Numbered from the stretch's first letter, positions 67 through 54,701 are shown. The stretch is DNA of 64,000 nucleotides from Octopus sinensis (GCF_006345805.1 NC_043020.1:9610001-9674000), one strand, 5' to 3'. The notes: generated by a model not told the origin, from the letters alone. Made by a program: numbers and translations.

Positions 67-114
67 TAAGATCCAGGAAATACGTCTATGAACCAATTGT
101 AGATGCTAATGAAG
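67..114 (+). CDS. SLC37A3: SLC37A3-like internal exon (48 nt; xRSRKYVYEPIVDANE), central cytoplasmic loop
   Basis: Pyrimidine tract + ttttcag acceptor, gaag|gtaacc donor. Ends in phase 1, which joins in frame to exon 13861 (G+AT = Asp). Loop sequence itself is not recognisably conserved. Confidence 0.65.
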
Positions 115-330: not shown

Positions 331-559
331 TCTTTACTCTTTACTCTTTACTCTTTTACTCGTTTACTTGTTTCAGTCATTTGACTGCGGCCATGCTGGA
401 GCACCGCCTTTAGTCGAGCAAATCGACCCTGGGACTTATTCTTTGTAAGCCCAGTACTTATTCTATCGGTCTCTTTTGCCGAACCGCTAAGTGATGGGGA
501 CGTAAACACACCAGCATCGGTTGTCAAGCAATGCTAGGGGGACAAACACAGACACACAA

Positions 560-602
<43 letters not shown>

Positions 603-763
603 TATGACGGGCTTCTTTCAGTTTCCGTCTACCAAATCCACTCACAAGGCATTGGTCGGCCCGGGGCTATAGTAGAAGACACTTGCCCAAGATGCCACGC
701 AGTGGGACTGAACCCGGAACCATGTGGTTGGTTAGCAAGCTACTTACCACACAGCCACTCCTA
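331..763 (-). mobile_element. tRNA-derived SINE family A (about 420 bp, CORE-like cttgggcaagt, internal TA/TG microsatellite, (AAAGAGT)n tail); about 17 copies, e.g. 2245-2650, 6195-6577, 12070-12482, 32490-32892, 39940-40270, 42380-42757, 46085-46467, 56560-56968, 58318-58722, 61560-62027
   Basis: Pol III A box TGGCTGTGTGG and B box GGTTCAGTCCC; many near-identical copies in both orientations. Confidence 0.9.
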
Positions 764-933
764 AATCTTTATCCACACCATATAGAAAAAATATTTATTT
801 GTTATTTATTTATTTATTGTTTATTTATTTATTGTATATGTACTTAATTGATTTTTAGAATAAGGTTTTTATAGTATATTTATTTTTTCTCGCATAGCAA
901 GTGATTTGAGCTGAGATCGTGTGCTGGAACAAA

Positions 934-1209
934 AACAATTGCAGCGTGGAATGTGTTTGTAAGCCATTTAAGAAACACACAAAAGCCGTTCAATTCACTT
1001 CAACATTTAAGTTTAATTTGTCAAAATATTTTCGTCGCTAAAATCCGCGACCTGTTCACTGACAGCAGCATGGATTTTTGTCAGTGAACAGGTCGCGGAT
1101 TTTAGCGACGAAAATATTTTGACAAATTAAACTTAAATGTTGAAGTGAATCAAACGGCTTTTGTGTGTTTCTTAAATGGCTTATAAACACCTTCCACGCT
1201 GCAATTGTT
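934..1209. repeat. Fold-back inverted repeat, 131-bp arms, 14-nt loop (probable Penelope-like element end)
   Basis: 934-1064 is the near-perfect reverse complement of 1079-1209; PLE assignment is inference from the hammerhead-like fold. Confidence 0.9.
1077..1126 (+). ncRNA. Minimal type-I hammerhead-like fold with G3-C8 core (GUGAACA...GAAA)
   Basis: Stem I tttgtca/tgacaaa, stem II gtcgc/gcgac, palindromic stem III aatatt; mirrored on - in the other arm. Confidence 0.6.
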
Positions 1210-1377
1210 ATTTTTTCTATATGGTGTGAATAAAGTCTTTCACTATTGAATTGCTAATACAGGTTTTTCTCTCAATTATACACATATATGTTGTCAGATT
1301 TGATTTAGAATTGCTAAATTGAATTTTTCCCTGTAAGTTTGGAATTATATTCCTATTATTATTATTATTATTATTAT

Positions 1378-2233: not shown

Positions 2234-2998
2234 TTTTTTTTTTACTCTTTTTTACTTGTTTCAGTCATTTGACTGTGGCCATGCTGGAGCACCACCTTTA
2301 GTCAAGCAAATCGACCCTAGGACATATTCTTTGTAAGCCTAGTACTTATTCTATCGGTCTCTTTTGCCGAACCGCTAAGTGACGGGGACGTAAACACACC
2401 AGCATCAGTTGTCAAGCAATGCTAGGAGGACAAACACACACACACAAACACATACACACACATACATATATATATATATACATATATACGATGGGCTTCT
2501 TTCAGTTTCCATCTACCAAATCCACTCACAAGGCTTTGGTCGGCCCGAGGTTATAGTAGAAGACACTTGCCCAAGATGCCACGCAGTGGGACTGAACCCT
2601 GAACCATGTGGTCGGTAAACAAGCTACTTACCACACAGCCACTCCTACGCCTTACTTTGCAAATTACTGTATGTGTGTTCAAAACATTTCCAAAATGTTC
2701 ATTTTGTCCCACTACAAGTCTGTGCGAGAGCTTCTGCATGATTCCTAGAACTGCCAGACAAATCATTTTGTCTGATGTGCTAATTATTCTTCCACAACAA
2801 CTACAATAACATAGTAATTAATGATTTCTAATGTAGCAACAGTAAATTATAATAATGTGTAAGTTAAGAACTGTTGCTATAGCGACATAGATTTCTTCAT
2901 CAACTCCTCTCATCACTAAAATATGTTTCTTTCTCTTTTTCCCTTTAACCCTCCGTGTCCTCTTATATATTTATTTGTTTATTTCCTCCTGACATCAG

Positions 2999-3034
2999 AT
3001 GTTATGTCCCCACATTGTTCTTACACTGAGAGTG
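2999..3034 (+). CDS. SLC37A3: Candidate 36-nt phase-1 microexon, copy 1 (DVMSPHCSYTES)
   Basis: tttcctcctgacatcag|ATGTTATGTCCCCACATTGTTCTTACACTGAGAGTG|gtaagt; frame-preserving between exons 67-114 and 13861-13958. Confidence 0.55.
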
Positions 3035-3404
3035 GTAAGTAAAAACCAAGACTAGGGTCCAACCCCTAAATATATTCTTATTTGAATATTGTATTTTGAA
3101 ATCCTTGTTTCGCATGCTTTATTTTTTTTTCTTTGAATGCAATTTTAAAAGAAAAAAAATTGTTTGTTCTAATATCTAGTTAGGTTATCATAATCATCAC
3201 CATCATAGTTATTATCACCAGCATCGTGATCATGATTATCATCATCATCATCATCATCGCATTCTTTTTTTTTTTTATATTCTGTACTTATTTAGTTTGA
3301 ATGGTTTTTCTTCCATATTATTTTTTGCCACTCTGTATGGCAATTTAACAAGAGAATTAACTCTGTGTACAAAAAAATGTATCAAGGTTTACTGTAGAAT
3401 AAAT

Positions 3405-3665
3405 TTTGGCCCCCGTGCCGGTGGCACATAAAAAGTACCATCCGTTCGTGGCCGTTTGCCAGCTCTGTCTGGCACCTGTGCGGGTGGCACGTAAAAAGCA
3501 CCCACTACACTCACGGAGTGGTTGGCGTTAGGAAGGGCATCCAGCCGTAGAAACACTGCCAGATCTGACTGGGCCTGATGAAGCCTTCTGGCTTCACAGA
3601 CCCCAGTTGAACCGTCCAACCCATGCTAGCATGGAAAGCGGACGCTAAACGATGATGATAATGAT
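3405..3665 (+). mobile_element. Non-autonomous retroelement family B ending in (TGA)n; copies near 14860-15160, 15710-15950, 23200-23610, 31925-32135, 39090-39788, 44160-44470, 60195-60580
   Basis: Shared gttggcgttaggaagggcatccag...cggacgttaaacgatgatgat end with a variable number of internal aaaagcaccatccg repeats; no head seen. Confidence 0.8.
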
Positions 3666-5037
3666 GCTGATAAATATAGTTGTTTTGTAGTTATGGCTCA
3701 TATTACATAGAGAGAAAGAGGGTGAGTGTGGAGAGAGAGAGAGAGTATAAGCAAAGGAAAGAGAAGACATGCTTAGTAACTGAAAAAGAACCATATCAAA
3801 CTGTACCTCGTTTCCTCAGTTTTGGTGTGGCCATATCAATTCACTCGTAACCAAACCCCTAATGGAATACGCAGCCTGTGGTTTTGCAGTTAATTTTGAA
3901 AATATTAAAGAACTTTTAGGAATCCAGTAAAGGAACCAACTTTTTTGTTATCAAGTTGGTATTTGCCTCACAAGTTTGACTGCGGGCTGGTGAACCAGAT
4001 GGCTGCACCAGGCTCCTGTCTTGATCTGGCAGAGTTTCTACAGCTGGATGCACTTCCTAATGCCAACCACTCCGAGAGTGTAGTGGGTGCTTTTATGTGC
4101 CACCGGCAAGGGGCCAGTCAGGTGGTACTGGCAACAACCTTTCTTGAATCTTTTTACACATGCCACCGGCACAGGTGCCAGTAAGGTGATGCTGGTAACG
4201 GTCACGCTCAAATGGTCCCTTTTACGTGCCACTAGCATGGAAGCCAGTTTGCTGCTCTGGCAACGATCATGCTTGGTTGGTGCTCTTTAGCACCCTACTA
4301 GCATGGGGCTCAAGTGCTAGTAAGGCGACGCTGGTGTTTCTGATTTAGCTTCAAGGCCAGCAGTTTGAAAGTGGAGTGGGGACTAGATAATTAAAGAGTT
4401 AGTTATAGGATTACTTATTGAATTAATTTACTGATACTGTTTTTGTACATAGGGTAAATGTGTATTTTTCTTGTAGATTGATTAATAATGTTAATGTTTA
4501 ATCCTTCCTAGAATTAAGATCGAATGAATGTGGTGATATCTAAGGTATCTTTGTTCCCAAACAACACTTATTTTAGTGCTGTTGACACCGCTGGATTGAG
4601 TGGTACTGTCCAGGTGTTGAAACCATAGTGATATGCGTGGAGCAGCCGACGATGGAGGTGTATTTGATTGTTGGTATGGCTGTTATTGTTTGTGCAGAAT
4701 ATTTTTATAAGACATCCATTTGATATATATTTTATCAACCCTGAAACGATGCATAGCAAAGTTGCCTACTACAGGATTTGAACTCAGAAGGTAAGAGATT
4801 CAGAAGAAAAACCAATGCTAATTATTCTTCCACAACAACCACAATAACATAGTAAATAATGATTTCTAATGTAACAACGATAAATTACGATAATGTGCAA
4901 GTTAAGAGCTGTTGCTATAGTAACATACATTTCTTCATCACTCCTCCCATCGCTAAAGTATAGTTGCTTATTTGTTTTCCCCTTTAACCTTCTTTACCCT
5001 TTTATATATTTATTTATTTATTTCCTCCTAACATCAG

Positions 5038-5073
5038 ATGTTATGTCCCCACATTGTTCTTACACTGAGAGTG
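5038..5073 (+). CDS. SLC37A3: Candidate 36-nt microexon, copy 2 (identical to copy 1)
   Basis: ctaacatcag|...|gtaagt; exon identical to copy 1 while the flanking intron is clearly diverged. Confidence 0.5.
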
Positions 5074-5739
5074 GTAAGTAAAACCAAAACTAAATTCTAA
5101 CCCCTAAAATATATTATTATTTTGAAATCTTTGTTTCGCATGCTTTGTTTTTCTGTGAATGCAATTTTAAAAGGAAAAATGGTTCGTAGTAAAGATTGTT
5201 TGCCAACATAACATGGCAGTCCTGGTTGAGGACTAATGTTGCTGTAATTTTAGCCCCAGGAGATGTCGTCTCCAGCTGGCTACACGACACAATCTGTGTC
5301 CTTGTATAGATTCCCTTGTTTGAAAATATAAGTACTGTTGCTGAATATCTCACGTTGTGAGATTTTAAAAATAGTAATTTTCAAAAAATGGTTTGTGCTA
5401 ATTTCTAGTTTAACCCTGTAGTGTTTAAACCGGCCAAATCCGGCCCAATATATTCTACATATTTTATATTCAAACTGGTGATATCTAGCCTCTCACTCCT
5501 AACCTACAATGCCATTCTGAAAATAAACAATCACATAATTGAAACCTCAAAACTATAAGATAATGCATGATTAATTCAAAACAATTTGAGTGAAAAATAT
5601 TACATTTAACAGAGTAATCTGAATGCTAAAGGGTTAAGTTACCATAATCATCATCGTCATCGTCATTACCACCAGCACCATCATCATCAGCATCCTCATC
5701 ATCATCATCATCATCCCCATTTTTTTTTTTTTCTTATAT

Positions 5740-6170
5740 TCTGTACTTACTTGGTTTGGATGGGTTTTCTTCCATCTAGTGTTTTGTTCCTCATTGTGGT
5801 CCATCGCCATCTCTTTGAGGAGATTCTGCTTCCTGAAATTAGACGTCACCACTTTATCCAATGCCTTCTGTGGTTTTATTTTTGCAAAGGTTCCTTCCAC
5901 TTTAATTTGTTGTAATTTTTTTGTCCCCACCATCATCATATATCTGTACCACCTCCATAGTCCCTCTTGTACACTACAACTCAACTCATCTATTCTCCAT
6001 CGCTCATGCATGCTGTTACATGACACATCCATTGGAGCATGCTCACCTAATTTCTTTCCTAATCTTCGCACATTTTCCACATTGAATGCCCTTTTTTTTG
6101 ACTACGCAACATCAAACTTCATACACAGGCATCATACACTTTGCCCTTCATACAGTGAAAGAAACTTTGT
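5740..6170 (-). mobile_element. Degenerate RTE-clade LINE 3' region; related remnants at about 3270-3350 and 9228-9430
   Basis: ...LWRWYRYMM...KVEGT...KALDKVVTSNFRKQNL resembles the RTE ORF C-terminus (RLRWYGHVMR...GRPRKTW). Confidence 0.6.
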
Positions 6171-7077
6171 TACCATGTGGGATTTTTTTTTTTTATTTGT
6201 TTCAGTCATTTGACTGCGGCCATGCTGGAGCACCGCCTTTAGTCGAGCAAATCTTATTCTTTGTAAGCCCCCAGTAATTATTCTATTGCTTTTTTTTTGC
6301 CGAACCGCTAAGTGACGGGGACATAAACACACCAGCATCGGTTGTCAAGCAATGCTAAGGGAACAAACACAGACACACACACACACACACACACACTTAT
6401 ATATACATATATACGACAGGCTTCTTTCAGTTTCTGTCTACCAAATCCACTCACAAGGCTTTGGTCGGCCCGGGGCTATAGCAGAAGTCACTTGCCCAAG
6501 ATGCCACACAGTGGGACTGAACCCGGAACCATGTGGCTGGTTAGCAAGCTACTTACCACACAGCTACTCCTGCACCTATAATAAGTTTCTATGACTTTTC
6601 CTCCCCACTTTCTTTCTCAGGCTGCTATGTGTTCCAAACATCCATCACCACTGCTCATTAGGGACCCTAATTAACAGACGATATCAACTACTTGATATCA
6701 TCATCATCATCATCATTTAACGTCCGCTTTCCATGCTAGTTAATTACATATATTCTATCGACCCTAGAAAGAGGAAAAGCAGAGTTGACTTTGGCACGAT
6801 TTGAACTCAGAGAGTAAGATAATCAGAAGAAAAGCCACAAATCATTTTGTCTGATGTGCTAATTATTCTTCCACAACAACTACAATAACATACATAATAA
6901 TGATTTCTAATGTAGCAACATTAAATTATAATAATATGCAAGTTCAGAACTGTTGCTATAGCGACATAGATTTCTTCATCAACTCCTCTCGTCACTAAAA
7001 TATGTTTCTTTCTCTTTTTCCCTTTAACCCTCCGTGTCCTCTCATATATTTATTTGTTTATTTCCTCCTAACATCAG

Positions 7078-7113
7078 ATGTTATGGCCCCACATTGTTCT
7101 TACACTGAGAGTG
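7078..7113 (+). CDS. SLC37A3: Candidate 36-nt microexon, copy 3 (DVMAPHCSYTES)
   Basis: Same splice signals; single TCC>GCC change. Confidence 0.5.
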
Positions 7114-7371
7114 GTAAGTAAAAGCCAAAACTAATCTCTAACCCCTAAAATATATTCTTATTTGAATATTGTATTTTGAAATCCTTGTTTCGCATGCTTT
7201 ATTTTTTTTCTGTGAATGCAATTTTAAAAGAAAAAAAAATGGTTTGTTCTAATTACTGGTTCAAGTTATTGTAATCATCATCTTCATTATTATCATCATC
7301 ATTTTGATGTGGCCATGTCATTTATTTCATATGGCTTATCAATTAATATTTACACACACACACACACACAC

Positions 7372-7419
<48 letters not shown>

Positions 7420-7451
7420 GTGTGATCTCTTGAGCATCTTTCCTTCTCCTT

Positions 7452-7486
7452 GTTTCCAACGAAGAGCTCCGCTCGAAACGTTAAAC
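7452..7486 (+). ncRNA. Degenerate minimal hammerhead-like motif (CCAACGA-A-GAGC tcc GCTC-GAAACGTT)
   Basis: Stem I gttt/aaac, stem II GAGC/GCTC, palindromic ACGT; G5 is A. Confidence 0.45.
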
Positions 7487-7703
7487 CCTCCTTCCCTTCT
7501 TTCCTGAGCGTCAATAATACTTTAATTGTTCCACGTCCTGCGTTGCTGTGTTTTTTTTCTGTGTTTTCTTGTTTGGATTAACTATATATATATATATATA
7601 TACTTATACATATATATATGTGTGTGTGTACATAACCAGTCACCATGCTTGATCGCTAAATCCACAAGTTTTTTATTCTCTCTCTGTTTATTTTCTCTTA
7701 TTC

Positions 7704-7739
7704 CTTTCTGTTGAAGAGCATAGGCTCGAAATATAAAAG
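7704..7739 (+). ncRNA. Degenerate minimal hammerhead-like motif (CTGTTGA-A-GAGC atag GCTC-GAAATATA)
   Basis: Stem I cttt/aaag, stem II GAGC/GCTC; A6 is T. Confidence 0.4.
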
Positions 7740-7880
7740 ACTTTCCCACTTTCCCGAGCATCAGACTAACACACCTGCTGTTGTTCATACACCTGTCTCC
7801 GTCTTTAGTTTTTCTATAAAATTCAACTATATATATTTATATATTTGCACATATCTATATATATATATATTTGTATATTT

Positions 7881-7931
<51 letters not shown>

Positions 7932-8066
7932 TAAATTAGAGATAAAACCACTATTAGGCAAATCAAACAATGAAAAACTTAAGCCAATACATAAAATTAA
8001 TTAATTTATATTATTTTAAATATATATCAAAAGTATTAAAAGTTTAATAAAAGATAATGAGTAAAA

Positions 8067-8135
8067 CACTACGATCGTTTCATGGCTGTCCAATTCGTAA
8101 TAATTCGAGTTATGGTTACAGTCAATCTTCAGGTA
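8067..8135 (-). ncRNA. Minimal hammerhead with canonical core (CUGAAGA...GAAAC GAUC GUA)
   Basis: Stem II TGACTG/CAGCCA, palindromic stem III ACGATCGT, 3-bp stem I TAC/GTG. Confidence 0.6.
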
Positions 8136-8708
8136 ATTGAAATATCTAAAATATAAGCAGAAATATTTAAACAATATTTTTAAGATATAAATAATATAAT
8201 AATTTTACTTATAATAAACTCTATTATCAAACTAGAAACATAGAACTTAACAATTAAGTTTGGATTTATTCCCTAATATTTTATTATTAATTATATATAT
8301 ATTGATTCTGCTCTTATGCATTTATTGAATTGATATGAATGCGTGCATGAAGATAACCCACATATATATACATACACATACTCATACATGTATATATATC
8401 ATTGGACGATTTTGACTGAGGGCTGGTGAACCAGATGGCTGCACCAGGCTCCAAACTTTTTGTCTGATGTACTAATTATTCTTCCACAACAACCACAATA
8501 ACATAGTAATTAATGATTTCTAACGTAGCAACAGTAAATTATGATAATGTGCAAGTTAAGAACTGTTGCTATAGCAACATAGATTTCTTGATCAACTCCT
8601 CTCATCACTAAAATATGTTTCTTTCTCTTTTTCCCTTTCTTTCTCTTTTTCCCTTTAACTCTCCGTGTCCTCTTATATATTTATTTGTTTATTTCCTCCT
8701 AACATCAG

Positions 8709-8744
8709 ATGTTATGTCCCCACATTGTTCTTACACTGAGAGTG
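8709..8744 (+). CDS. SLC37A3: Candidate 36-nt microexon, copy 4 (identical to copy 1)
   Basis: ctaacatcag|...|gtaagt. Confidence 0.5.
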
Positions 8745-9002
8745 GTAAGTAAAAGCCAAAACTAATCTCTAACCCCTAAAATATATTCTTATTTGAATAT
8801 TGTATTTTGAAATCCATGTTTCGCATGTTTTATTTTTTTTCTTCTGTGAATGCAATTTTAAAAGAAAAAATGGTTTGTTCTAATATCTAGTTTAAGTCAT
8901 CATAATCATAATCATCATCACCACAGCAACCATCATCATCAGCATCATGATCCTCAACACCATCATTTTTACATTTTCTTTTATCTTCTGTACTTGGTTT
9001 AA

Positions 9003-9223
9003 CCCTTTCGTTACCAACCCGGCTGAAACCGGCTCTGGCTCTTTAGTACAAATGTCTGGTTTTCAAAAGTTTTGACTTAAAATCTTCCACCAAAGCTTAG
9101 TCACAATTTACATCCCTAACTCTAGCTTAATGATAACGATGTTATTTTACTTAATTCTTTGTTATATTTAAAATAATTGGAAGAAACACTGAGCATCTCA
9201 AAATAAATTCAGTAACGAAAGGG
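9003..9223. mobile_element. piggyBac-like MITE (CCCTTTCGTTAC TIR); relatives near 25358-25975, 41961-42180, 42292-42894
   Basis: TTAA TSD at 8999-9002 and 9224-9227, 12-bp TIR. Confidence 0.85.
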
Positions 9224-9961
9224 TTAAACAGGTTTTCTTCCATCTTGTGTTCTGCCACTCTTTGTGGACCATTGCACAAGGTCATGCATCTTCACAGTTC
9301 CCCATACTCCAACATTATCATTTGATGTTACTTAAAGAGAAACGGTGTGGCTGGGAAGGAAGAATTGTGACCATTCCATACTGTTTGAGATTCATCGTCA
9401 TCAATCTTGAAAGCACCGTGTTATCTTAACACATGTATTGATATTGATTTGTAAAGCATGTTGGGCCTGGTTGGAGGCCCAAGTTTCCAAGTTCTTTTAC
9501 AGGGCTTAGAAAAACTGAAGAACCTCTGCAATAAGTCTGTGAATCAGAGAGGGAAATATGTTGACTAAAATCAGAATTAACTGATCCTCCTTTATTTTCT
9601 TTTACCTATAGCCCGGAACTTTTCCACAATGCCTTGTGTTTATGTATATATATATGTGTGTGTGGAGGCGCAATGGCCCAGTGGTTAGGGCAGTGGACTC
9701 ACGGTTGCAGGATCGCGGTTTTGATTCCCAGACTGGGCGCTGTGAGTGTTTATTGAGTGAAAACACCTAAAGCTCCACGAGGCTCCGGCATGGGGGTGGT
9801 GGCGATCTCTGCTGTACTCTTTCGCTATAACTTTCTCTCACTCTTTCTTCTGTTGGCCTGCTCACTTAGCCAGCGGGGTGGCATCATTTGAAGGCTGAAA
9901 CAATGCGAAGCGCATTGTGACGAGCGATGTGTAGCAACATCTGATAGCCTGGTCGGTCACG

Positions 9962-11790: not shown

Positions 11791-12668
11791 CAAATGCAAC
11801 GACACCCACAAACATACACTCACACACACACACATATATCTTATATGATGGATTTCGACACAGTGTCCATCTGCCAAATCCAATCACAAAACATTGGCCA
11901 GCCAGAGATTATAAGCTATAATTAGACATTTGCCCAAAGTGCCACACAGTGGGACTGAACCCAAAACCTTGTGATTGCAAAGTGTGTTTATTAACCACAT
12001 AGCCATGCCTGTCAGTCATTACCTGATCTATTTCTATTTTATGTCCCTGTCTTATCGTTAATCTATCTCTTTACTCTTTACTCTTTTACTTGTTTCAGTC
12101 ATTTGACTGTGGCCATGCTGGAGCACTGCCTTTAGTCGAGCAAATCGACCCCCGGGACTTATTCTTTGTAAGCCCAGTACTTATTCTATCGGTCTCTTTG
12201 GCCGAACCGTTAAGTAACGGGGACGTAAACACACCAGCATCGGTTGTCAAGCAATGCTAGGGGGACAAACACAGACACACAAACACATACGCACACATAC
12301 ATATATATACATATATACGACAGGCTTCTTTCAGTTTCCGTCTACCAAATCCACTCACAAGGCATTGGTCGGCCCGGGGCTATAGCAGAAGACACTTGCC
12401 CAAGATGCCTCGCAGTGGGACTGAACCCGGAACCATGTAGTTGGTTAGCAAGCTACTTACCACACAGCCACTCCTGCGCCTATCGTTTATTAAAGTTTTG
12501 GCTAAAACTTATTTTCACCAGCATATGTTGTACAAAATAGACTGAAACTCTAAAATCTATTCTAAAATATGTTACAATATAAAATTATATGACAAATTAT
12601 AATAAATTAAGAGAATTTTATATATTCGTTATGCAAGATTTTTTATGTGAAGTTGTGTGTTGAAACAG

Positions 12669-13860: not shown

Positions 13861-13958
13861 ATCCTCTACTTCCGGAAGAGATTCCTGAAGAAGAGGATGA
13901 AGACAAAGATGAAGCTATAAGATTTTTGGATGCCTTCATGTTGCCTGGGGTTCTTTTG
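13861..13958 (+). CDS. SLC37A3: SLC37A3-like exon (DPLLPEEIPEEEDEDKDEAIRFLDAFMLPGVLL)
   Basis: tttgcag acceptor, ttg|gtgagt donor; AIxFxxAxxLPGV matches the SLC37A family motif. Confidence 0.9.
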
Positions 13959-14523: not shown

Positions 14524-14665
14524 TGTGCCTTTGCGTATGCCTTCCTGAAGCTGGTGAATTACTCTTTCTTCTTTTGGTTACCCCTCTACCTTGACCGCAA
14601 CTTCCACTGGTCAGAGGATACGGCAGACAAGATATCTATCTGGTATGACGTTGGTGGTATTATAG
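14524..14665 (+). CDS. SLC37A3: SLC37A3-like exon (CAFAYAFLKLVNYSFFFWLPLYLDRNFHWSEDTADKISIWYDVGGII)
   Basis: Near-identical to the vertebrate SLC37A3 motif LKLVNYSFFFWLP...ADKLSIWYDVGGIIG; AG/GT boundaries. Confidence 0.97.
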
Positions 14666-16142: not shown

Positions 16143-16168
16143 GTGGAACTGTTGCAGGATATGTATCT
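16143..16168 (+). CDS. SLC37A3: SLC37A3-like 26-nt exon (GGTVAGYVS)
   Basis: ctttcag|...|gtgagt; phases 1 to 0 bridge the flanking exons; matches GGTLQGFISD. Confidence 0.9.
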
Positions 16169-17519: not shown

Positions 17520-17595
17520 GATCGTATTGGGAGACGAGGAATCGTAGTTGTACCGATGTTGATTTTCGCTATACCATCTCTTGTTCTCTATTCCT
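17520..17595 (+). CDS. SLC37A3: SLC37A3-like exon (DRIGRRGIVVVPMLIFAIPSLVLYS)
   Basis: ttcag acceptor, t|gtaagt donor; MFS D-R-x-G-R-R motif. Confidence 0.92.
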
Positions 17596-18675
17596 GTAAG
17601 TAATTATTCAATTTATTCACTATTCTTTTATTTTTTTATTTTTTTCTTGTTTCAATCATTTGACTCTGGCCATGCTAAAGCACTGCCTTCAAGGGTTTTT
17701 AGTCAAACAAATCGACCGCATGACATCCTCAGTCATCCAAGACTAGTTATATTACCTGATATGGGGCATTTAGTGTTATTTAATACTTGGCATTGTGTAG
17801 GGATACTATCCTGCAGCAAATAAGAGTGTAAGCAAAACACACACACTATATATATGTGAGGTGTTTAGTAACAGACCATCATAAGCACCAAAGCTTAAAA
17901 ACCAAGAACAATGCAGTCAAAGCTTCACGACTTTCGGAATGTAATATCTTGGCAAGGAATAAAGTCAGGAAGCTGGTTTTAGTCTTAGAGTGACTGTGAA
18001 GACCTCTTCTAATCATTCCACCTTGGTAAAATTATTTATTCATGTATGCATCTGAAAGATGCAACAATAACTGTGTCTTTCTCATTTTGTAGACTATACC
18101 TATTTCTTTATTACCCACAAGGGGCTAAACATAGAGGGGACAAACAAGGACAGACAAAGGTATTAAGTCGATTACATCAACCCCAGTGCGTAACTGGTAC
18201 TCAATCTATCGACCCTGAAAGGATGAAAGGCAAAGTCGACCTTGGCGGAATTTGAGCTCAGAATGCAACGGCAGACGAAATACCGCTAAGCATTTCGCCC
18301 GGCGTGCTAACGGTTCTGCCAGCTCGACGCCTTTTTGTAGACTATACTGGTACTATGAAACAGTGTATCGCATTGCATATTTTAGCCATAATACCTAGAA
18401 AGAAAAAAACATACAGACCCCACCCCCACCCCAGAGGTATTGTTTTTGCTTTAATGCACCAAGGTAAGTATCTTTAAGAGGTAAATTCCATAGTCTTTTC
18501 AAATGGCTAATCATGTGTGCGCGCGCCGCTACTACACACATTGGAAAGCATTGTACAACCAAGCACTAAAGAAGGTCTTTCCTCCTCCATGAAACAAAGC
18601 TGTTCCCGCTGGACGTCAACCCAGTATTTCTAAGCTATGGACCGAGTGATTTATTGTAAGGTTATCTCCCTAGAC

Positions 18676-20473: not shown

Positions 20474-20584
20474 ACCTGCCGACCAGTGTCAGTAAAAATA
20501 TGAATGCATTTATCCTGTCGATTTGTGGCTTATTTATTGGCGGTGTTGCTAGTTTGATTAGTGCTGCCATCTCTGCTGATCTAG
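20474..20584 (+). CDS. SLC37A3: SLC37A3-like exon (YLPTSVSKNMNAFILSICGLFIGGVASLISAAISADL)
   Basis: tctag acceptor, g|gtaagt donor; ISAAISADLG family motif. Confidence 0.95.
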
Positions 20585-27804: not shown

Positions 27805-28760
27805 TTTTAGTCAAGTTAAGTTAAGTTAAGTTAATTTTTTGGCTCAAAAAGCAAAAAGCAAGGCCATGTAGGGGGACATGGAGTTATGTACAGGGAGGGT
27901 GTTCATGCAAAGAGTTCAGGCCATTTCTGGTCAAGAGAGACTTTGAACCGAGCAGTCGTCAGCATCTTCACTATCTCGTCCGGCAGCTTATTCCACGGAT
28001 CCGCAACCTGGACGGAGAAAGCCCCTCTCCTTCGATTTACGTACAGGGAGGGTGTTCATGCAAAGAGTTCAGGCCATTTCTGGTCAAGAGAGACTTTGAA
28101 CCGAGCAGTCGTCGGCATCTTCACTATCTCGTCCGGCAGCTTATTCCACGGATCCGCAACCCGGTCGGAGAAAGCCCCTCTCCTTCGATTTACGTACAGG
28201 GAGGGTGTTCATGCAAAGAGTTCAGGCCATTTCTGGTCAAGAGAGACTTTGAACCGAGCGGTCGTCGGCATCTTCACTATCTCGTCCGGCAGCTTATTCC
28301 ACAGATCCGCAACCCGGACGGAGAAAGCCCCTCTCCTTCGATTTACGTACAGGGAAGGTGTTCACACAAAGAGTTCAGGCCATTTCTGGTCAAGAGAGAC
28401 TTTGGACCGAGCGGTCATCAGCATCTTCACTATCTCGTCCAGCAGCTTATTCCACGGATCCGCAACCCGGACGGAGAAAGCCCCTCTCCTCCGATTTACG
28501 TACAGGGAGGGTGTTCATGCAAAGAGTTCAGGCCATTTCTGGTCCAGAGAGACTTTGAACCGAGCAGTCGTCGGCATCTTCACTATCTCGTCCGGCAGCT
28601 TATTCCACGGATCCGCAACCCGGACGGTGAAAACCCCTCTCCTTCGATTGAGATGAAATCGTCGCAGATAGAGCTTTTCGGAGTGATCCCGCAGCCGACG
28701 CTCTGGAGCAGGAGTGAATGTAATCCCCTTAATTTGAAACCAGTTTGATAAGTGCCAATC
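27805..28760 (-). mobile_element. CR1/L2-clade LINE 3' end with five tandem 153-bp units and (TAACT)n tail
   Basis: FTVRVADPWNKLPDEIV RT C-terminus; units start at 27888, 28041, 28194, 28347, 28500. Confidence 0.9.
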
Positions 28761-34459: not shown

Positions 34460-37440
34460 TACCAGTAGAGCACTGGGTTTTACACAATTGACTAGCTCCC
34501 ATCACAACCAAATTTCATGCCTTATTATAAATGTTATTGTTATTAAGGTGATGAGCTGGAAGAATGGTTAGTAGGTTGGACAAAATGCTTAGTGGCATTT
34601 CACCTGACCCTACATTCTGAGTTCAAATTGTGCTAAAGTCGACCTTTACCTTTTATCTTTTTTGGAGGTCAATAAAATAGGTACTGGTCAAGTATTGAGG
34701 TTGATGTAATTAATTAAAGCCCTTCCCCAGGCCCTGTGGCTATATTAGAAAGACATTTTATTTTTATCATAAGGATTTGAACTTAGAATGTTAAGAGTTA
34801 TAGTTTTTGGTTACAGCTCCCTACATTCCGGGTCCAAATTGTGGTGAGGTCAGTTTGACCATGACCTTTCATCCTTCTGTGGTCAATGAAATATTAGGTT
34901 GTCCCAAAAGTTCGTAAACACTTGCGAATATTGAATTTTTACTCGCCAAGTACTAACAAAAACAACAAAAATTATTCCTCAAAATAAAGACCATTATTTT
35001 CCAAGACTTTCTATGAACTTTTGGGACAACCTTATATATACTAGTCGTATTCTTGGGTCAGTATAACTGACTAAATCCCTTAATCCCAAATTTACTTCCC
35101 TTGTGACTGTTTTTTTAATAAACAATGACATCCATTTCTTTGATATATTTTTTCAACTGCTGTGAGATATTAATTAAAGACTCAAAACCAGGATGTTATA
35201 TAAACTTTACTGTAAATATACTGTATGAATATAAAAAACATTTTTTTTCTTAAAATCTGTGTTTGGCTCAATTTTATTTTTTCATCATTCTTTTACTTGT
35301 TTCAGTTATTTGACAACAGATGCTGGTGTGTTTACGTCCCCGTAACTTAGCGGTTCGGCAAAAGAGACCTATTTCTTTATTACCCACAAGGGGCTAAACA
35401 TAGAGGGGACAAACATGGACAGACATAGGTATTAAGTCGATTATATCGACCCCAGTGCTTAACTGGTACTTAATTTATCGACCCCGAAAGGATGAAAGGC
35501 AGGAGGCCAGAAATTTTGGGGAAAGGGGACTAATCGATTATATTGACCCCAGTGTTTCACTGGTACTTAATTTATCAACCTCAAAAAGGATGGAAGGCAA
35601 AGTTGACCATGGCAGAATTTGAGCCCAGAATGTAAAGACAGATGAAATTTTATTTTTTCATCATTTTTTTACTTGTTTCAGTCATTTGACAACAGATGCT
35701 GGTGTGTTTACGTCCCCGTAACTTAGCGGTTCGGCAAAAGAGACCTATTTCTTTATTACCCACAAGGGGCTAAACATAGAGGGGACAAACATGGACAGAC
35801 ATAGGTATGAAGTCGATTATATCGACCCCAGTGCTTAACTGGTACTTAATTTATCGACCCCGAAAGGATGAAAGGCAAAGTCGACCTCGGCGGAATTTGA
35901 ACTCACAAAGTAACGGCAGACGAAATACCGCTAAGCATTTCGCCCGACGTGCTAACAATTCTGCTAGCTCGCCGGTTCGGCAAAAGAGACCGATAGATTA
36001 AGTACTAGGCTTACAAAGAATAAGTCCTGGGGTCGATTTGCTCGACTAAAGGCAGTGCTCCAGCATGGCTACAGTGAAATGACTGAAACAAGTAAAAGAG
36101 TAAAAGAGAGTATGCATACAAACAAGTCATTTTTCCTGTTAGTTCTTTTGAAATATTTTTGCTATGTATTTTTATACAAGAAAACAGTTTGTTTTAGAGT
36201 TATCTGTGTCCCAGGAAGAGAAGAGGTTCAAAAGAATAAGGGGTCAAAGAACCAAAAGTTCTGATAAGACTGTTGCAGGAATTACTGGAGAACTAAGTGC
36301 TTCCCACTGGAGGTGGGCAGTCAAGGATTTCCCTTAAAACTTTGGGTAATAGATGAGTGAGCAGAAAAGCCATCAAGAAGAACACAGACATTGCGGAGGA
36401 TGTGGGTGGCTACGATTAAAACAGAAGTAACAGGTGTAGAGTCAGTAGAATGCCACCTGGGTACTGTCAACAAGAAATATCTTTTCTTTACTACCCACAA
36501 GGGGCTAAACATAGAGGGGACAAACAAGGACAAGGACAGACAAACGGATTAAGTCGATTACATCGATCCCAGTACGTAACTGGTACTTAATTTATCGACC
36601 CCAAAAGGATGAAAGGCAAAGTTGACCTCGGCGGAATTTGAACTCAGAACGTAATGGCAGACGAAATACGGCTACGCATTTCGCCTGGCGTGCTAACTGT
36701 TCTGCTAGCTCGCCGCCTAACTAGAAATATCACTGGTGTGTGGAAGCACTCCGTCGGTTACGACGATGAGGGTTCCGGTTAATCGGATCAACGGAACAGC
36801 CTGCTCGTGAAATTAACGTGTAAGTGGCTGAGCACTCCACAGACACGTGTACCCTTAACATAGTTCTCAGGGGATATTCAGCGTGACACAGAGAGTGACA
36901 AGGCCGGCCCTTTGAAATACAGGTACAACAGAAACAGGAAGTAAGAGTGAGAGAAAGCTGTGGTGAATGAGTACAGCAGGGATCACCACCATCCCCTGCC
37001 AGAGCCTCGTGGAGCCTTCAGGTGTTTTCGCTCAATAAACACTCACAACGCCCGGTCTGGGAATCGAAACCGCAATCCTACGACCGCGAGTCCACTGCCC
37101 TAACCACTGGGCCATTGCGCCTCCACATGAAGCATGTAACAATGAGCTGTCACACTAACGATAAACAGCTAAGTCACTGTTACTATATAATATCTGTTGG
37201 GACCGTTCTGTGATGATGCTGCAGAACAGTATGAGTGCTGGAGACTGGTAACACTACCAAAGTTACCTCTGAGTTGCTGAAGCAGAAATATCATTATAGC
37301 AAATATTCTGCTCAATACCACAGATTTGCTTGACCTTAACTACTTGACCATGTCCCTTAGTGGCTGACAATACGTGCTTCTCTGATCATGAGCAGAAGTA
37401 GTTGGGAAGTATTATAGCTATATAATACACCTTTTCAAAC

Positions 37441-52949: not shown

Positions 52950-54701
52950 CTTACAGTGCTTTGTGTATGTGAGTGCAAGACTAGAAGGAATGCCAGAACT
53001 ACTGACACTTGATAGAACGGAGAGTTAATGTTGAATGTAAAATGAAAACAATGACATTTTCTCATACCAGCTGCACACAAAAGCATTTATATTGATTACT
53101 CTTTACAATGGATCAATGCATTAGCACACACATATACACCAACCACTATTAACCCTTTAGCATTTAAACCGGCCATATCCGGCCAAAAGTATTCTACCTG
53201 TTTTATGTTCAAACTGGCCAGATCTGGTCTCTCACACCAGCCCTAGAATATCATTTTAAAAATTAACAGCTACCTCATCGAAATCTCATAGCTACAAGAT
53301 AATGCCTGATTAGTTCAAGGCAATGTGGATAAAAAAGGATTAATTTTGGCAGAATAATGTGAACACTAAAGGGTTAAATATACATATTTATGTGTATGTG
53401 TATAAGTACATATATGTGTGTGTGTGTGTGTGTGTATATACTCCCTTTGGTGCGTTCATGTACACATATACACACAAATTACTTTTTGCTCATACACACA
53501 CACACACACACGTGTATGTGTGCAAGTGTACTCCCTTTGATGAAGTTATACACACATCACTTATTCTGATTAAGGTAGAAACACATGATCCTTTCATATA
53601 CAACCCAATCTGAAACACAGAATCCTGACTCAATGCAGAATACAACCTCACACACGCCCATTTTACTTCCTTACATCAACAATCTTGAAGCACATATACA
53701 TGAACCAATGAATACCTATTTCTTTATTGCCCACAAGGGGCTAAACACAGAGGGGACAAACAAGGACAGACATAGGTATTAAGTCGATTATATTTTTTTT
53801 TCTGTCGTTTCAGCTCAGAGCTGTGGCCATGCTGTTGCACCGCCGTTAAAATGTAAACACAAGCGAAAATATATTTCTTTACTACCCACAAGGGGCGAGA
53901 GACAGAGGACAAACAAGGACAGACAAATGGATTAAATCGATTATATCGACCCCAGTGCCTAACTGGTACTTATTTAATCGACCCCGAAAGGATGAAAGGC
54001 AAAGTCAACCTTGGCAGAATTTGAACTCAGAACGTAGCGGCAGACGAAATACCTATTTCTTTACTACCCACAAGGAGCTAAACACAGAGGGGACAAACAA
54101 GGACAGACATAGGTATTAAGTCGATTACATCGACCCTAGTGCGTAACTGGTACTTAATTTATTGACCCCGAAAGGACGAAAGGCAAAGTCGACCTCGGCG
54201 GAATTTGAACTCAGAACGTAACGGCAGACGAAATACCGCTAAGCATTTCAACTGGCATGCTAACGTTTCTGCCAGCTCGCCACATGGTTCAATGTGACAT
54301 AAGCACACACACACACACACTAATCTTTCCTGTAGAGTCACACATATATACACACACAGTTTTTCATTTTCATGTTTAACCCATTAGCATTCAAACCGGT
54401 CATGTCCAGCTCAAATAAGTTTTATGTTTAAACTGACCAGATCTGGCCTGACATCATCTACCCGACGATGTCCTTCTTAAAATAAACAAAATCACATCAA
54501 AATCTTGAAGCTGCTTGATTAATTAAAAGCAATGTGAATAAATAAGCAATACATTTGACTGAGTAATCTGAATGTTAAAGGATTAATATTTAAGACACAC
54601 AAATAATACTTCCATATTATGGATCACACATGGTTCAATGTGTGATACAAGGGGTGATATAAGCACACACACACACGCACAGACTAACCTTTTCCTTAGA
54701 T

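What the first reader, a model, noticed from the sequence alone, without database searches (positions are those of the whole stretch)
2999..8744. Four tandem copies of a frame-preserving 36-nt microexon in one SLC37A3 intron
Seen: an about 450-bp block recurs at about 2760-3200, 4815-5180, 6840-7290 and 8455-8900. Each contains a pyrimidine tract, a branch-like ctaac/ctgac, AG, 36 nt, and GTAAGT. The 36-mers (2999, 5038, 7078, 8709) differ by one base in total, while the flanks of copies 1 and 2 differ at roughly 10-20% of sites by eye and have collected different TE insertions. Phase 1-1 matches exons 67-114 and 13861, so 0-4 copies of DVM(S/A)PHCSYTES could be spliced into the central cytosolic loop. 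Inference: a selected exon array, either mutually exclusive, cumulative or redundant. The first two spacings are oddly similar (2039, 2040, then 1631 bp).
Basis: partly seen in the sequence, partly recalled or inferred. Interest (0 to 1): 0.82.

Follow-up and report, generated by a model that had tools for sequence, protein, structure and literature searches.

The report
Four duplicated candidate microexons in SLC37 intron
One intron of a sugar-phosphate-transporter-like gene (SLC37 family) holds four tandem copies of a 36-base, frame-preserving, exon-like element that has stayed almost identical while its surroundings diverged; it is a good but RNA-unverified candidate for a duplicated cassette microexon, which is a known kind of gene evolution.

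Summary
The 36-mer occurs four times on the + strand (2999, 5038, 7078, 8709) and nowhere else in the window, with one substitution in total. Each copy has a pyrimidine tract-AG before it and GTAAGT after it, inside a duplicated unit of about 0.5-0.7 kb.

The host gene is an SLC37-family MFS transporter and looks SLC37A3-like. The intron lies in the central cytosolic loop. Phase 1-1 fits both flanking exons, so 0-4 copies of DVM(S/A)PHCSYTES stay in frame.

A 67-column stretch (3' splice region, exon, 5' splice site) has 2 variable columns (3%), against 33% in the adjacent flanks. The most diverged copy has 0/67 differences there, against 13-19% beside it.

The first 60-150 bp of each unit is the tail of a dispersed SINE-like repeat; the exon part is not. 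The spacers are unrelated insertions, so the 2039/2040 spacing is coincidence.

Nothing supports mutually exclusive use: introns are long, length is 3n, splice sites are of one type, and no docking site was found. No structured RNA was found.

No transcript or cross-species data could be reached, so expression is untested, and patchy gene conversion remains a rival. Verdict: a plausible duplicated cassette microexon, a new member of a known kind, of moderate interest.

The parts
67..114 (+). Upstream coding exon (48 nt, ..RSRKYVYEPIVDANE + 1 base). It ends in phase 1.
   Evidence: The sequence reads cag|TAAG...GAAG|gtaacc and is open in one frame only. The alignment to vertebrate SLC37A3-like loops runs through this exon.
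2758..3352 (+). Duplicated unit, copy 1. Its upstream end is truncated by a SINE-like insertion at 2233-2652.
   Evidence: Self-BLAST gives 92% identity to C3, 86% to C4 and 85% to C2.
2999..3034 (+). Candidate microexon copy 1 (36 nt, phase 1-1, (D)VMSPHCSYTES).
   Evidence: The AG-free zone upstream is 106 nt and the donor is GTAAGT.
4725..5179 (+). Duplicated unit, copy 2, the most diverged. 4725-4815 is the tail of a dispersed SINE-like repeat. The unit continues at 5633-5799 after a 453-bp insertion at 5180-5632.
5038..5073 (+). Candidate microexon copy 2, identical to copy 1.
   Evidence: C2 has 0/67 differences from the majority across the 3' splice region, exon and 5' splice site, against 19% upstream and 13% downstream.
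6748..7308 (+). Duplicated unit, copy 3. The stretch from 6748 to about 6900 is the SINE-like tail and its A/C-rich end.
7078..7113 (+). Candidate microexon copy 3, with T>G at 7086 (TCC>GCC, Ser>Ala).
8458..8995 (+). Duplicated unit, copy 4. It has an 18-bp internal duplication in the pyrimidine tract. The unit resumes at 9224-9280 after an inserted repeat.
8709..8744 (+). Candidate microexon copy 4, identical to copy 1.
3112..3116 (+). GCATG (RBFOX-type core) 78 nt downstream of copy 1. The same motif is kept at 5138-5142, 7192-7196 and 8823-8827.
   Evidence: Read from the sequence and from invariant columns in alignment A1. It is a weak clue only.
13861..13958 (+). Downstream coding exon (98 nt; (D)PLLPEEIPEEEDEDKDEAIRFLDAFMLPGVLL). 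It starts in phase 1 and leads into TM7.
   Evidence: Homology to SLC37A2 (9ucm) and a rice SLC37-like protein (23ic) starts here.
14524..14665 (+). Next coding exon (CAFAYAFLKLVNYSFFFWLPLYLDRNFHWSEDTADKISIWYDVGGIIG).
16143..16168 (+). A 26-nt obligatory microexon of the same gene ((G)GTVAGYVS). It is needed to keep the frame between exons 14524-14665 and 17520-17595.
   Evidence: Splice-aware scan. It matches the vertebrate sequence GGTIQGLIS.
17520..17595 (+). Coding exon (DRIGRRGIVVVPMLIFAIPSLVLYS).
20474..20584 (+). Coding exon (..LPTSVSKNMNAFILSICGLFIGGVASLISAAISADLG).

Best explanation
An intronic segment of about 0.7 kb was duplicated in tandem to four copies. It consisted of the tail of an old SINE-like element, about 180 bp of unique sequence, a symmetric 36-nt cassette microexon with strong splice signals, and about 250 bp downstream. 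The segment lies in the intron that splits the central cytosolic loop (TM6-TM7) of an SLC37A3-like transporter gene. After the duplications, unrelated repeats inserted independently into each spacer and stretched the units to 1.6-2.0 kb.

All four copies kept an intact pyrimidine tract-AG, the 36-nt open phase-1 reading frame and a GTAAGT donor. Each is therefore most likely an independently recognisable cassette exon. Because the length is 3n and all phases match, transcripts can carry any number from 0 to 4 of the 12-residue unit DVM(S/A)PHCSYTES between ...VDANE and DPLLPEE....

Shown here: the anatomy, the frame compatibility, the exon-centred conservation, the SINE origin of the 5' part and the independent insertions. 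Inferred: that the copies are actually spliced, and that inclusion is cumulative or independent rather than one-of-four.
For: - Four copies with one substitution in total, and none elsewhere in the window.
- The architecture [>=75% pyrimidines]-AG-(3n, 9-51 nt)-GTAAGT occurs in the whole 64 kb only at these four sites, plus once on the minus strand. It is therefore rare, and it coincides with the conserved core.
- Only 36-column windows that overlap the exon have <=1 variable column; the mean is 9.
- Across the 67 columns covering 21 nt of the 3' splice region, the exon and 10 nt of the donor, 2 columns vary (3%), against 33% on both sides.
- The oldest copy, C2, has 0/67 differences there, against 19% and 13% in its flanks. 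The permutation P for a run that long is 5e-5 (7e-4 without gap columns).
- No indel touches the core, while the flanks carry several.
- The AG-free zones upstream are 72-124 nt, as long as or longer than those of the gene's real exons (57-93 nt), and the donors are as strong.
- The frames of both neighbouring exons are independently fixed and match phase 1-1.
- The same gene already depends on a 26-nt obligatory microexon.
- The exon-bearing part of the unit matches nothing else in the window.
- Independent insertions in every spacer, and one inside unit 2, show that the duplications are old relative to repeat activity.
Against: - There is no RNA or protein evidence. The protein collection holds no cephalopod sequence with these words, and a metagenome scan found nothing.
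- There is no orthologous comparison.
- With a single substitution, and that one non-synonymous, no coding-type test is possible; 2 of the 3 frames of the 36-mer are open.
- Divergence along the unit is patchy. The SINE-derived columns 46-104 are also only 5% diverged in C2.
- Sequence similarities disagree on the two sides of the exon: C1 is nearest to C4 and C3 upstream, while C3 equals C4 downstream, and three sites are shared by C2 and C4. Conversion or unequal crossing-over has therefore acted, and could explain part of the identity.
- There is no UGC motif just upstream of the AG, as is typical of SRRM4-dependent neural microexons (sequence).
- Vertebrate loops are about as long as the skipped form (28 against 26 residues).
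Confidence: 0.6

Rival explanations
1. The copies are unexpressed pseudo-exons. On this reading an exon-like sequence sits in a tandemly duplicated intronic segment by chance, or as a relic of a former exon. Its near-identity reflects short-tract gene conversion or unequal crossing-over between copies, not selection on a coding exon.
For: Such an architecture occurs about once per 64-128 kb by chance (one unrelated case on the minus strand). Divergence is patchy, with a second low-divergence patch in SINE-derived sequence. Site patterns are discordant upstream and downstream. The only substitution is non-synonymous. No transcript evidence exists.
Against: The conserved tract is centred exactly on AG-36-GTAAGT and ends within 10-21 nt of the splice sites. 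Under the conversion model that placement is unexplained. Four strong, frame-preserving exon mimics on the sense strand of a coding intron would be expected to be spliced at least sometimes. C2 has kept all signals despite 13-19% flank divergence.
Confidence: 0.22
2. The copies form a mutually exclusive exon cluster, in which exactly one of the four is included per transcript, as in classical tandem-duplicated exon arrays.
For: The copies have equal length and phase and share a tandem-duplication origin. These are the usual hallmarks of such clusters (PMC9013439, PMC6071210). Duplication of one arm of an intronic stem could create competing structures (PMC6071210).
Against: - Introns between copies are 1.6-2.0 kb, so there is no steric block.
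- All splice sites are the same GT-AG type.
- 36 is a multiple of 3, so double inclusion causes no frameshift or NMD.
- Complementary 11-mers between the four copies and the rest of the intron are not enriched: 16 observed, 13 in the reversed control, 10.4 +/- 3.5 in shuffles. The best duplexes involve dispersed SINE copies.
- Three copies encode the same peptide, so exclusivity would create almost no diversity.
Confidence: 0.07
3. The conserved core is a non-coding functional element repeated in the intron, such as a small RNA gene, a structured RNA or a protein-binding regulatory site, and not an exon.
For: Tandem intronic arrays of small RNA genes are known in animals (general knowledge). 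Other parts of the unit are also moderately conserved.
Against: Rfam gave no match inside any block at E<=1; all hits lie in TA/CA microsatellites. Folding about 115 nt around the core gives z-scores of -0.3 to +0.6 on either strand, so no stable hairpin exists. No C/D- or H/ACA-type model matched.
Confidence: 0.05
4. The array is an assembly artefact, produced by a falsely expanded repeat or by haplotypes laid out in tandem.
For: Tandem repeats of about 2 kb are sometimes mis-assembled. Two spacings differ by only 1 bp.
Against: The copies differ by 4-18% and by indels, and each spacer carries different repeat insertions. That is far more than haplotype-level difference and is not what a duplicated-read artefact gives.
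Confidence: 0.02

Closest known systems
[quoted passage not shown]
   Same: Adjacent homologous exons of equal length and phase lie within one gene. They were created by duplication of a segment that includes flanking intron, and the exon is more conserved than the intron.
   Different: The known functional cases are mostly diverged pairs used in a mutually exclusive way to swap a protein segment. Here there are four copies, they are almost identical, they are only 36 nt long, and nothing enforces exclusivity.
Cassette microexons (<=51 nt, usually 3n) in loops and disordered regions of animal proteins, often neural and regulated by SRRM4/eMIC, RBFOX and PTBP1 (general knowledge; microexons in a data set that includes Octopus bimaculoides are analysed in bioRxiv 10.64898/2026.09.05.749416)
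   Same: The element is 36 nt and symmetric. It has strong splice sites, a long pyrimidine-rich AG-free zone and a conserved GCAUG 65-82 nt downstream. It inserts into a cytosolic loop.
   Different: There is no UGC motif next to the 3' splice site. The tandem four-fold repetition is not a usual feature. Tissue regulation is unknown.
Schistosoma micro-exon genes (MEGs; bioRxiv 10.1101/2023.06.21.545858)
   Same: These also have runs of short symmetric exons separated by long introns, so that skipping any subset keeps the frame and yields length variants.
   Different: MEGs are secreted-protein genes built almost wholly of different microexons. Here a single microexon is repeated inside an otherwise ordinary transporter gene.
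Competing-RNA-structure (docking/selector) exon clusters such as Dscam exon 6, 14-3-3zeta and MRP (PMC6071210, PMC1431710)
   Same: Both are tandem arrays in which each unit carries an exon plus conserved adjacent intron.
   Different: No docking sequence complementary to all four units was found, and the exons do not differ.

Membership tests
Cassette microexon | Length <=51 nt and a multiple of three | tested here: met
   36 nt in all four copies.
Cassette microexon | Canonical 3' splice site (pyrimidine tract, AG) and 5' splice site (GT) | tested here: met
   Pyrimidine fraction >=0.75, an AG-free zone of 72-124 nt, and a GTG|GTAAGT donor in all four copies.
Cassette microexon | In frame with both neighbouring exons, without a stop | tested here: met
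   Phase 1-1. The translation is DVM(S/A)PHCSYTES, and the neighbours' frames are fixed by a unique ORF and by homology.
Cassette microexon | Found in spliced mRNA | not testable with these tools
   No cephalopod transcript or protein was reachable.
Cassette microexon | Exon and splice sites more conserved than the surrounding intron | tested here: met
   This was tested between paralogous copies only: 3% variable columns in the core against 33% in the flanks, and C2 has 0/67 differences, P 5e-5. Conversion is not excluded, and orthologues were not testable.
Tandem exon duplication | Two or more adjacent homologous exons in one gene, with homology extending into the flanking intron | tested here: met
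   Four units with 80-92% pairwise identity over 380-550 bp; alignment A1.
Mutually exclusive exon cluster | Exons homologous but diverged, giving alternative protein segments | tested here: not met
   Three copies are identical and one differs by a single residue.
Mutually exclusive exon cluster | A mechanism that forbids joint inclusion: an intron too short to splice, U2/U12 incompatibility, or frameshift/NMD | tested here: not met
   Introns are 1.6-2.0 kb, all splice sites are the same GT-AG type, and the length is 3n.
Mutually exclusive exon cluster | A docking site complementary to a selector sequence in every unit | tested here: inconclusive
   There is no enrichment of shared complementary 11-mers (16 observed, 13 in the reversed control, 10.4 +/- 3.5 in shuffles). 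Weak or long-range pairings cannot be ruled out.
SLC37 (sugar-phosphate/phosphate exchanger) family, MFS superfamily | Sequence homology to SLC37/GlpT-type MFS transporters across TM7-TM10 | tested here: met
   SLC37A2 (9ucm) E 6.5e-26, rice SLC37-like protein (23ic) E 1.8e-26, GlpT (1pw4) E 3.5e-7; Pfam MFS_1 at 54 bits against a cut-off of 33.
SLC37A3 orthologue specifically | Closer to SLC37A3 than to SLC37A1, A2 or A4 | tested here: inconclusive
   The best hits are unnamed vertebrate fragments, 70% identical over the exon, that carry KLVNYSFFFWLP. I recognise these as SLC37A3-type from memory. No named SLC37A3 reference was available, and SLC37A2 has KLVSYTFLYWLP.
   Within the 64 kb, the first 60-150 bp is a SINE-like tail with more than 25 copies, but the rest, including the exon, matches only the other three units. 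The whole genome was not available.
SRRM4/eMIC-type neural microexon | UGC motif between the pyrimidine tract and the AG | tested here: not met
   There is no TGC in the last 40 nt before any copy (sequence).

The most novel reading that the evidence does not exclude
The array could act as a copy-number 'dial' for the transporter's central cytosolic loop. Transcripts with 0, 1, 2, 3 or 4 identical 12-residue modules would be made in a regulated way, each module adding an SP site, CK2-type S/T-x-x-E/D sites and a cysteine.

Inclusion of at least one module would also create a canonical acidic dileucine sorting signal at the junction with the next exon. That junction reads ...T-E-S|D-P-L-L, which fits [DE]XXXL[LI] with Pro at -1, as in tyrosinase and LIMP-II (from memory). 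The skipped form reads N-E|D-P-L-L and lacks the acidic residue at -4. This could switch the protein between endolysosomal and other membranes. It would be relevant because mammalian SLC37A3 acts at lysosomes together with ATRAID (PMC6021172). The motif reading is my inference from the sequence and was not tested.
Probability: 0.1. Interest if true: 0.65.

Novelty: new member of a known kind. Interest (0 to 1): 0.4.

Why it matters
If the copies are spliced, this would be a clean natural example of a microexon multiplied in tandem and kept nearly identical. The result would be length variants of a transporter loop rather than alternative sequences. That use of exon duplication differs from the classical mutually exclusive pairs.

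It is directly testable with existing octopus RNA-seq and a simple RT-PCR ladder in 36-nt steps. It would also flag a regulatory loop in SLC37A3, a poorly understood lysosomal/ER transporter.

If the copies are not spliced, the case shows how gene conversion in tandem intronic repeats can mimic exon-like conservation.

Tried and rejected
- **Protein searches.** A search with the loop peptide, microexon included, found no candidate at all. A longer query found only vertebrate and other fragments, at most 81% identical over one exon and none from a cephalopod. No isoform evidence could be obtained, so I did not spend the third search or the representative search.
- **Metagenome scan.** An exact scan with a 32-mer from the exon and donor gave 0 hits.
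- **RNA families and folding.** The Rfam scan of 2600-9100 at E<=1 hit only microsatellite-driven miRNA and snoRNA models outside the blocks. Folding the core gave no stable structure. The RNA-gene idea was rejected.
- **Docking/selector search.** I used duplex folding and shared complementary 11-mers with controls. There was no signal, and the best duplexes involve dispersed SINE copies.
- **Homology of the microexon peptide to vertebrate loops.** BLASTP aligns VMSPHCSYTES with 'LCDEYSIQQRD' and 'VEVCGRTHQSV', but the region is low-complexity and the vertebrate loop length matches the skipped form. I judged this uninformative.
- **The equal 2039/2040 spacing.** I asked whether it reflects a real periodic unit. 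It does not: the spacers share no homology beyond the tail of the unit, and they contain different repeats.
- **Literature.** No paper links SLC37A3 with microexons, and the papers mentioning both octopus and microexons do not mention SLC37A3.

Full report
**1. Observation**

The 36-mer ATGTTATGTCCCCACATTGTTCTTACACTGAGAGTG occurs on the + strand at 2999, 5038, 7078 and 8709. The only difference is T>G at 7086. No further match exists in the 64-kb window, even with three mismatches, and none is expected by chance. GTAAGT follows each copy directly, and a pyrimidine-rich tract ending in AG precedes each. Start-to-start spacings are 2039, 2040 and 1631.

Self-BLAST defines the four homologous units:
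- C1: 2758-3289, with tail homology to about 3352.
- C2: 4725/4816-5179, resuming at 5633-5799 after a 453-bp insertion.
- C3: 6748/6837-7308.
- C4: 8458-8995, resuming at 9224-9280.

Pairwise identity over 380-550 bp is 80-92%.

**2. Host gene**

I reconstructed the exons around the array. Their coordinates are in the parts list; they come. They include a 26-nt obligatory microexon at 16143-16168 that encodes (G)GTVAGYVS and is needed to keep the frame.

The joined translation matches several transporters:
- human SLC37A2 (9ucm), E 6.5e-26
- a rice SLC37-like protein (23ic), E 1.8e-26
- E. coli GlpT (1pw4), E 3.5e-7

It also passes Pfam MFS_1. The closest sequences in the large protein collection are unnamed vertebrate fragments with the string KLVNYSFFFWLP. 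I recognise these from memory as SLC37A3-type. The family is therefore tested; the A3 assignment is likely but not formally tested.

The alignment to SLC37A2 begins at AIRFLDAF (residue 283, at the start of TM7). The array intron therefore splits the central cytosolic loop about 30 residues before TM7.

**3. Frame**

Exon 67-114 is open in only one frame and ends with one base of a codon (G). The frame of exon 13861 is fixed by homology, and it begins with AT, which completes GAT (Asp). The 36-mer also begins with AT and ends with G. Any number of copies therefore keeps the frame and adds DVM(S/A)PHCSYTES per copy. Two of the three frames of the 36-mer are open, so this alone is weak evidence.

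**4. How exon-like the element is**

I scanned both strands of the window for this pattern: >=75% pyrimidines in 20 nt, then AG, then 9-51 nt in multiples of three, then GTAAGT. The scan returns only the four copies, plus one unrelated site on the minus strand. The architecture is therefore rare, roughly one independent case per 64-128 kb, but not impossible by chance.

Each copy has an AG-free zone of 72-124 nt upstream. The gene's real exons have 57-93 nt. More distal yUnAy motifs are more plausible branch sites, for example the conserved TTAAC at -51. A GCATG is retained 65-82 nt downstream of every copy. No TGC lies next to the 3' splice site.

**5. Conservation**

In alignment A1, 66 of 382 ungapped core columns vary. 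Only 36-column windows that overlap the exon have <=1 variable column; the mean is 9.

| Alignment columns | Content | Columns variable in any copy | C2 vs majority of the other three |
|---|---|---|---|
| 46-104 | SINE-derived patch | 14% | 5% |
| 105-264 | upstream flank | 33% | 19% |
| 265-331 | 21 nt before the AG, exon, 10 nt of donor | 3% (2 of 67) | 0% (0 of 67) |
| 332-470 | downstream flank | 33% | 13% |

Shuffling C2's differences gives a run as long as 67 in 5e-5 of trials. Leaving out gap columns, a 77-column run gives 7e-4. The conserved stretch thus coincides with the one exon-like architecture of the region. That agreement is the main argument for a real exon.

**6. Caveats on 'selection'**

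Divergence is patchy, as the low-divergence SINE-derived patch in the table shows. Relationships also differ on the two sides of the exon:
- Upstream, C1 is closest to C4 (4.1%) and C3 (5.1%).
- Downstream, C3 and C4 are closest (3.8%).
- Three upstream sites are shared by C2 and C4 only.

Recombination between copies has therefore happened, and short conversion tracts could have contributed to the identity of the core. With a single substitution, and that one non-synonymous, no synonymous/non-synonymous test is possible.

**7. Origin of the unit**

The 5' 60-150 bp of the unit is the 3' tail of a dispersed SINE-like repeat. This is clearest in C2 (4725-4815) and in C3 (6748 to about 6900). 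The repeat has more than 25 copies in the window, and those copies end at ...GCTAACGATTCTGCCAGCTCGCCGCCTT and then diverge into unrelated flanks.

The rest of the unit, including the exon, matches only the other three units. The spacers share nothing beyond a short unit tail (3292-3352, 5751-5799, 9224-9280) and hold different repeats. Unit 1 has repeats at 3407-3666 and 3979-4289. Unit 2 has them at 5409-5637 and 6183-6583, plus an insertion inside the unit itself.

The ancestral unit was therefore about 0.7 kb. The duplications postdate the SINE and predate many later insertions. The 2039/2040 spacing is a coincidence of unrelated insertions.

**8. Alternatives tested**

Rfam finds nothing inside the blocks. 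The core does not fold better than shuffles on either strand. This argues against a small-RNA or structured-RNA element.

For mutually exclusive use, none of the known mechanisms fits:
- The introns between copies are 1.6-2.0 kb.
- All splice sites are of the same type.
- The length is 3n.
- Sequences outside the array that could pair with the same segment of all four units are not enriched: 16 observed, 13 in a reversed control, 10.4 +/- 3.5 in shuffles.
- The best duplexes involve dispersed SINE copies.

An assembly artefact is unlikely, given 4-18% divergence and different insertions in each unit.

**9. What could not be tested**

No cephalopod transcript, protein or genome was reachable. 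No paper connects SLC37A3 with microexons. Octopus bimaculoides tissue RNA-seq exists and is used for splicing studies, so the decisive test is easy for someone with access to the data.

**10. Likely mechanism**

The most likely reading (about 0.6) is four independently spliceable cassette microexons produced by tandem segmental duplication. These would give loop-length variants with 0-4 copies of a Ser/Thr/Cys-containing 12-mer.

One inference from the sequence alone concerns the junction of any last included copy with exon 13861. It reads E-S-D-P-L-L, which fits the acidic dileucine signal [DE]XXXL[LI]. The skipped junction reads N-E-D-P-L-L and does not fit. Mammalian SLC37A3 works at lysosomes with ATRAID (PMC6021172). 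This idea is speculative and untested.

**11. Comparison with known systems and verdict**

Tandem exon duplication is common in animal genes; about 10% is the figure reported in PMC9013439. Microexons in cytosolic loops are also a known class. Four near-identical copies of a microexon without any exclusivity mechanism is an unusual configuration, but not a new principle. I rate it as a new member of a known kind, with interest about 0.4. That score could rise if variable-copy inclusion or the sorting-signal switch were shown.

Noticed in passing
window 16143-16168 (+): A 26-nt obligatory microexon of the same gene, encoding (G)GTVAGYVS. It is required to keep the frame between exons 14524-14665 and 17520-17595 and corresponds to vertebrate GGTIQGLIS. 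It would be easy for gene predictors to miss.
   Followed up: partly
window 342-763, 2233-2652, 6183-6583, 12066-12483 and more than 20 other places: An abundant SINE-like repeat of about 400 bp (starting ...TTTCAGTCATTTGACTGCGGCCATGCTGGAGCACC...) with an internal CA/TA microsatellite. Three to four copies lie in the array intron alone.
   Followed up: partly
window 4725-4815, 6748-6900, 18194-18321, 35836-35962, 36577-36703, 54144-54274 and others: A second dispersed SINE-like family (...GGATGAAAGGCAAAGTCGACCTCGGCGGAATTTGAACTCAGAACGTAA...GTGCTAACGATTCTGCCAGCTCGCCGCCTT). Its decayed tail forms the 5' end of every duplicated unit.
   Followed up: yes
window 928-1215 and 1572-1752: Two near-perfect foldback palindromes, probably MITE-like elements. 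One has 137-nt arms that are 96% complementary with a 14-nt loop. The other has 90-nt arms that are 93% complementary with a 1-nt loop.
   Followed up: partly
window 27884-28649: A tandem array of five 153-bp units, 95% identical, that keeps one long open frame on the + strand (repeating ...YREGVHAKSSGHFWSRETLNRAVVGIFTISSGSLFHGSATRTEKAPLLRFT...). Its nature is unknown; it may be a minisatellite or part of a repeat element.
   Followed up: no
window 3112-3116, 5138-5142, 7192-7196, 8823-8827: A GCATG (RBFOX-type core) is kept in all four units 65-82 nt downstream of the candidate microexon, inside a locally conserved stretch (TTGTTTCGCATG).
   Followed up: partly
window 3179-3260, 5633-5715, 7265-7300, 8885-8960: Each unit ends in an (ATC)n-type microsatellite of different length. 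This could have favoured unequal crossing-over between units.
   Followed up: no
window 8612-8650: Copy 4 carries an 18-bp internal tandem duplication (TTTCTTTCTCTTTTTCCC) inside its pyrimidine tract. This lengthens its AG-free zone to 124 nt without touching the splice site.
   Followed up: partly
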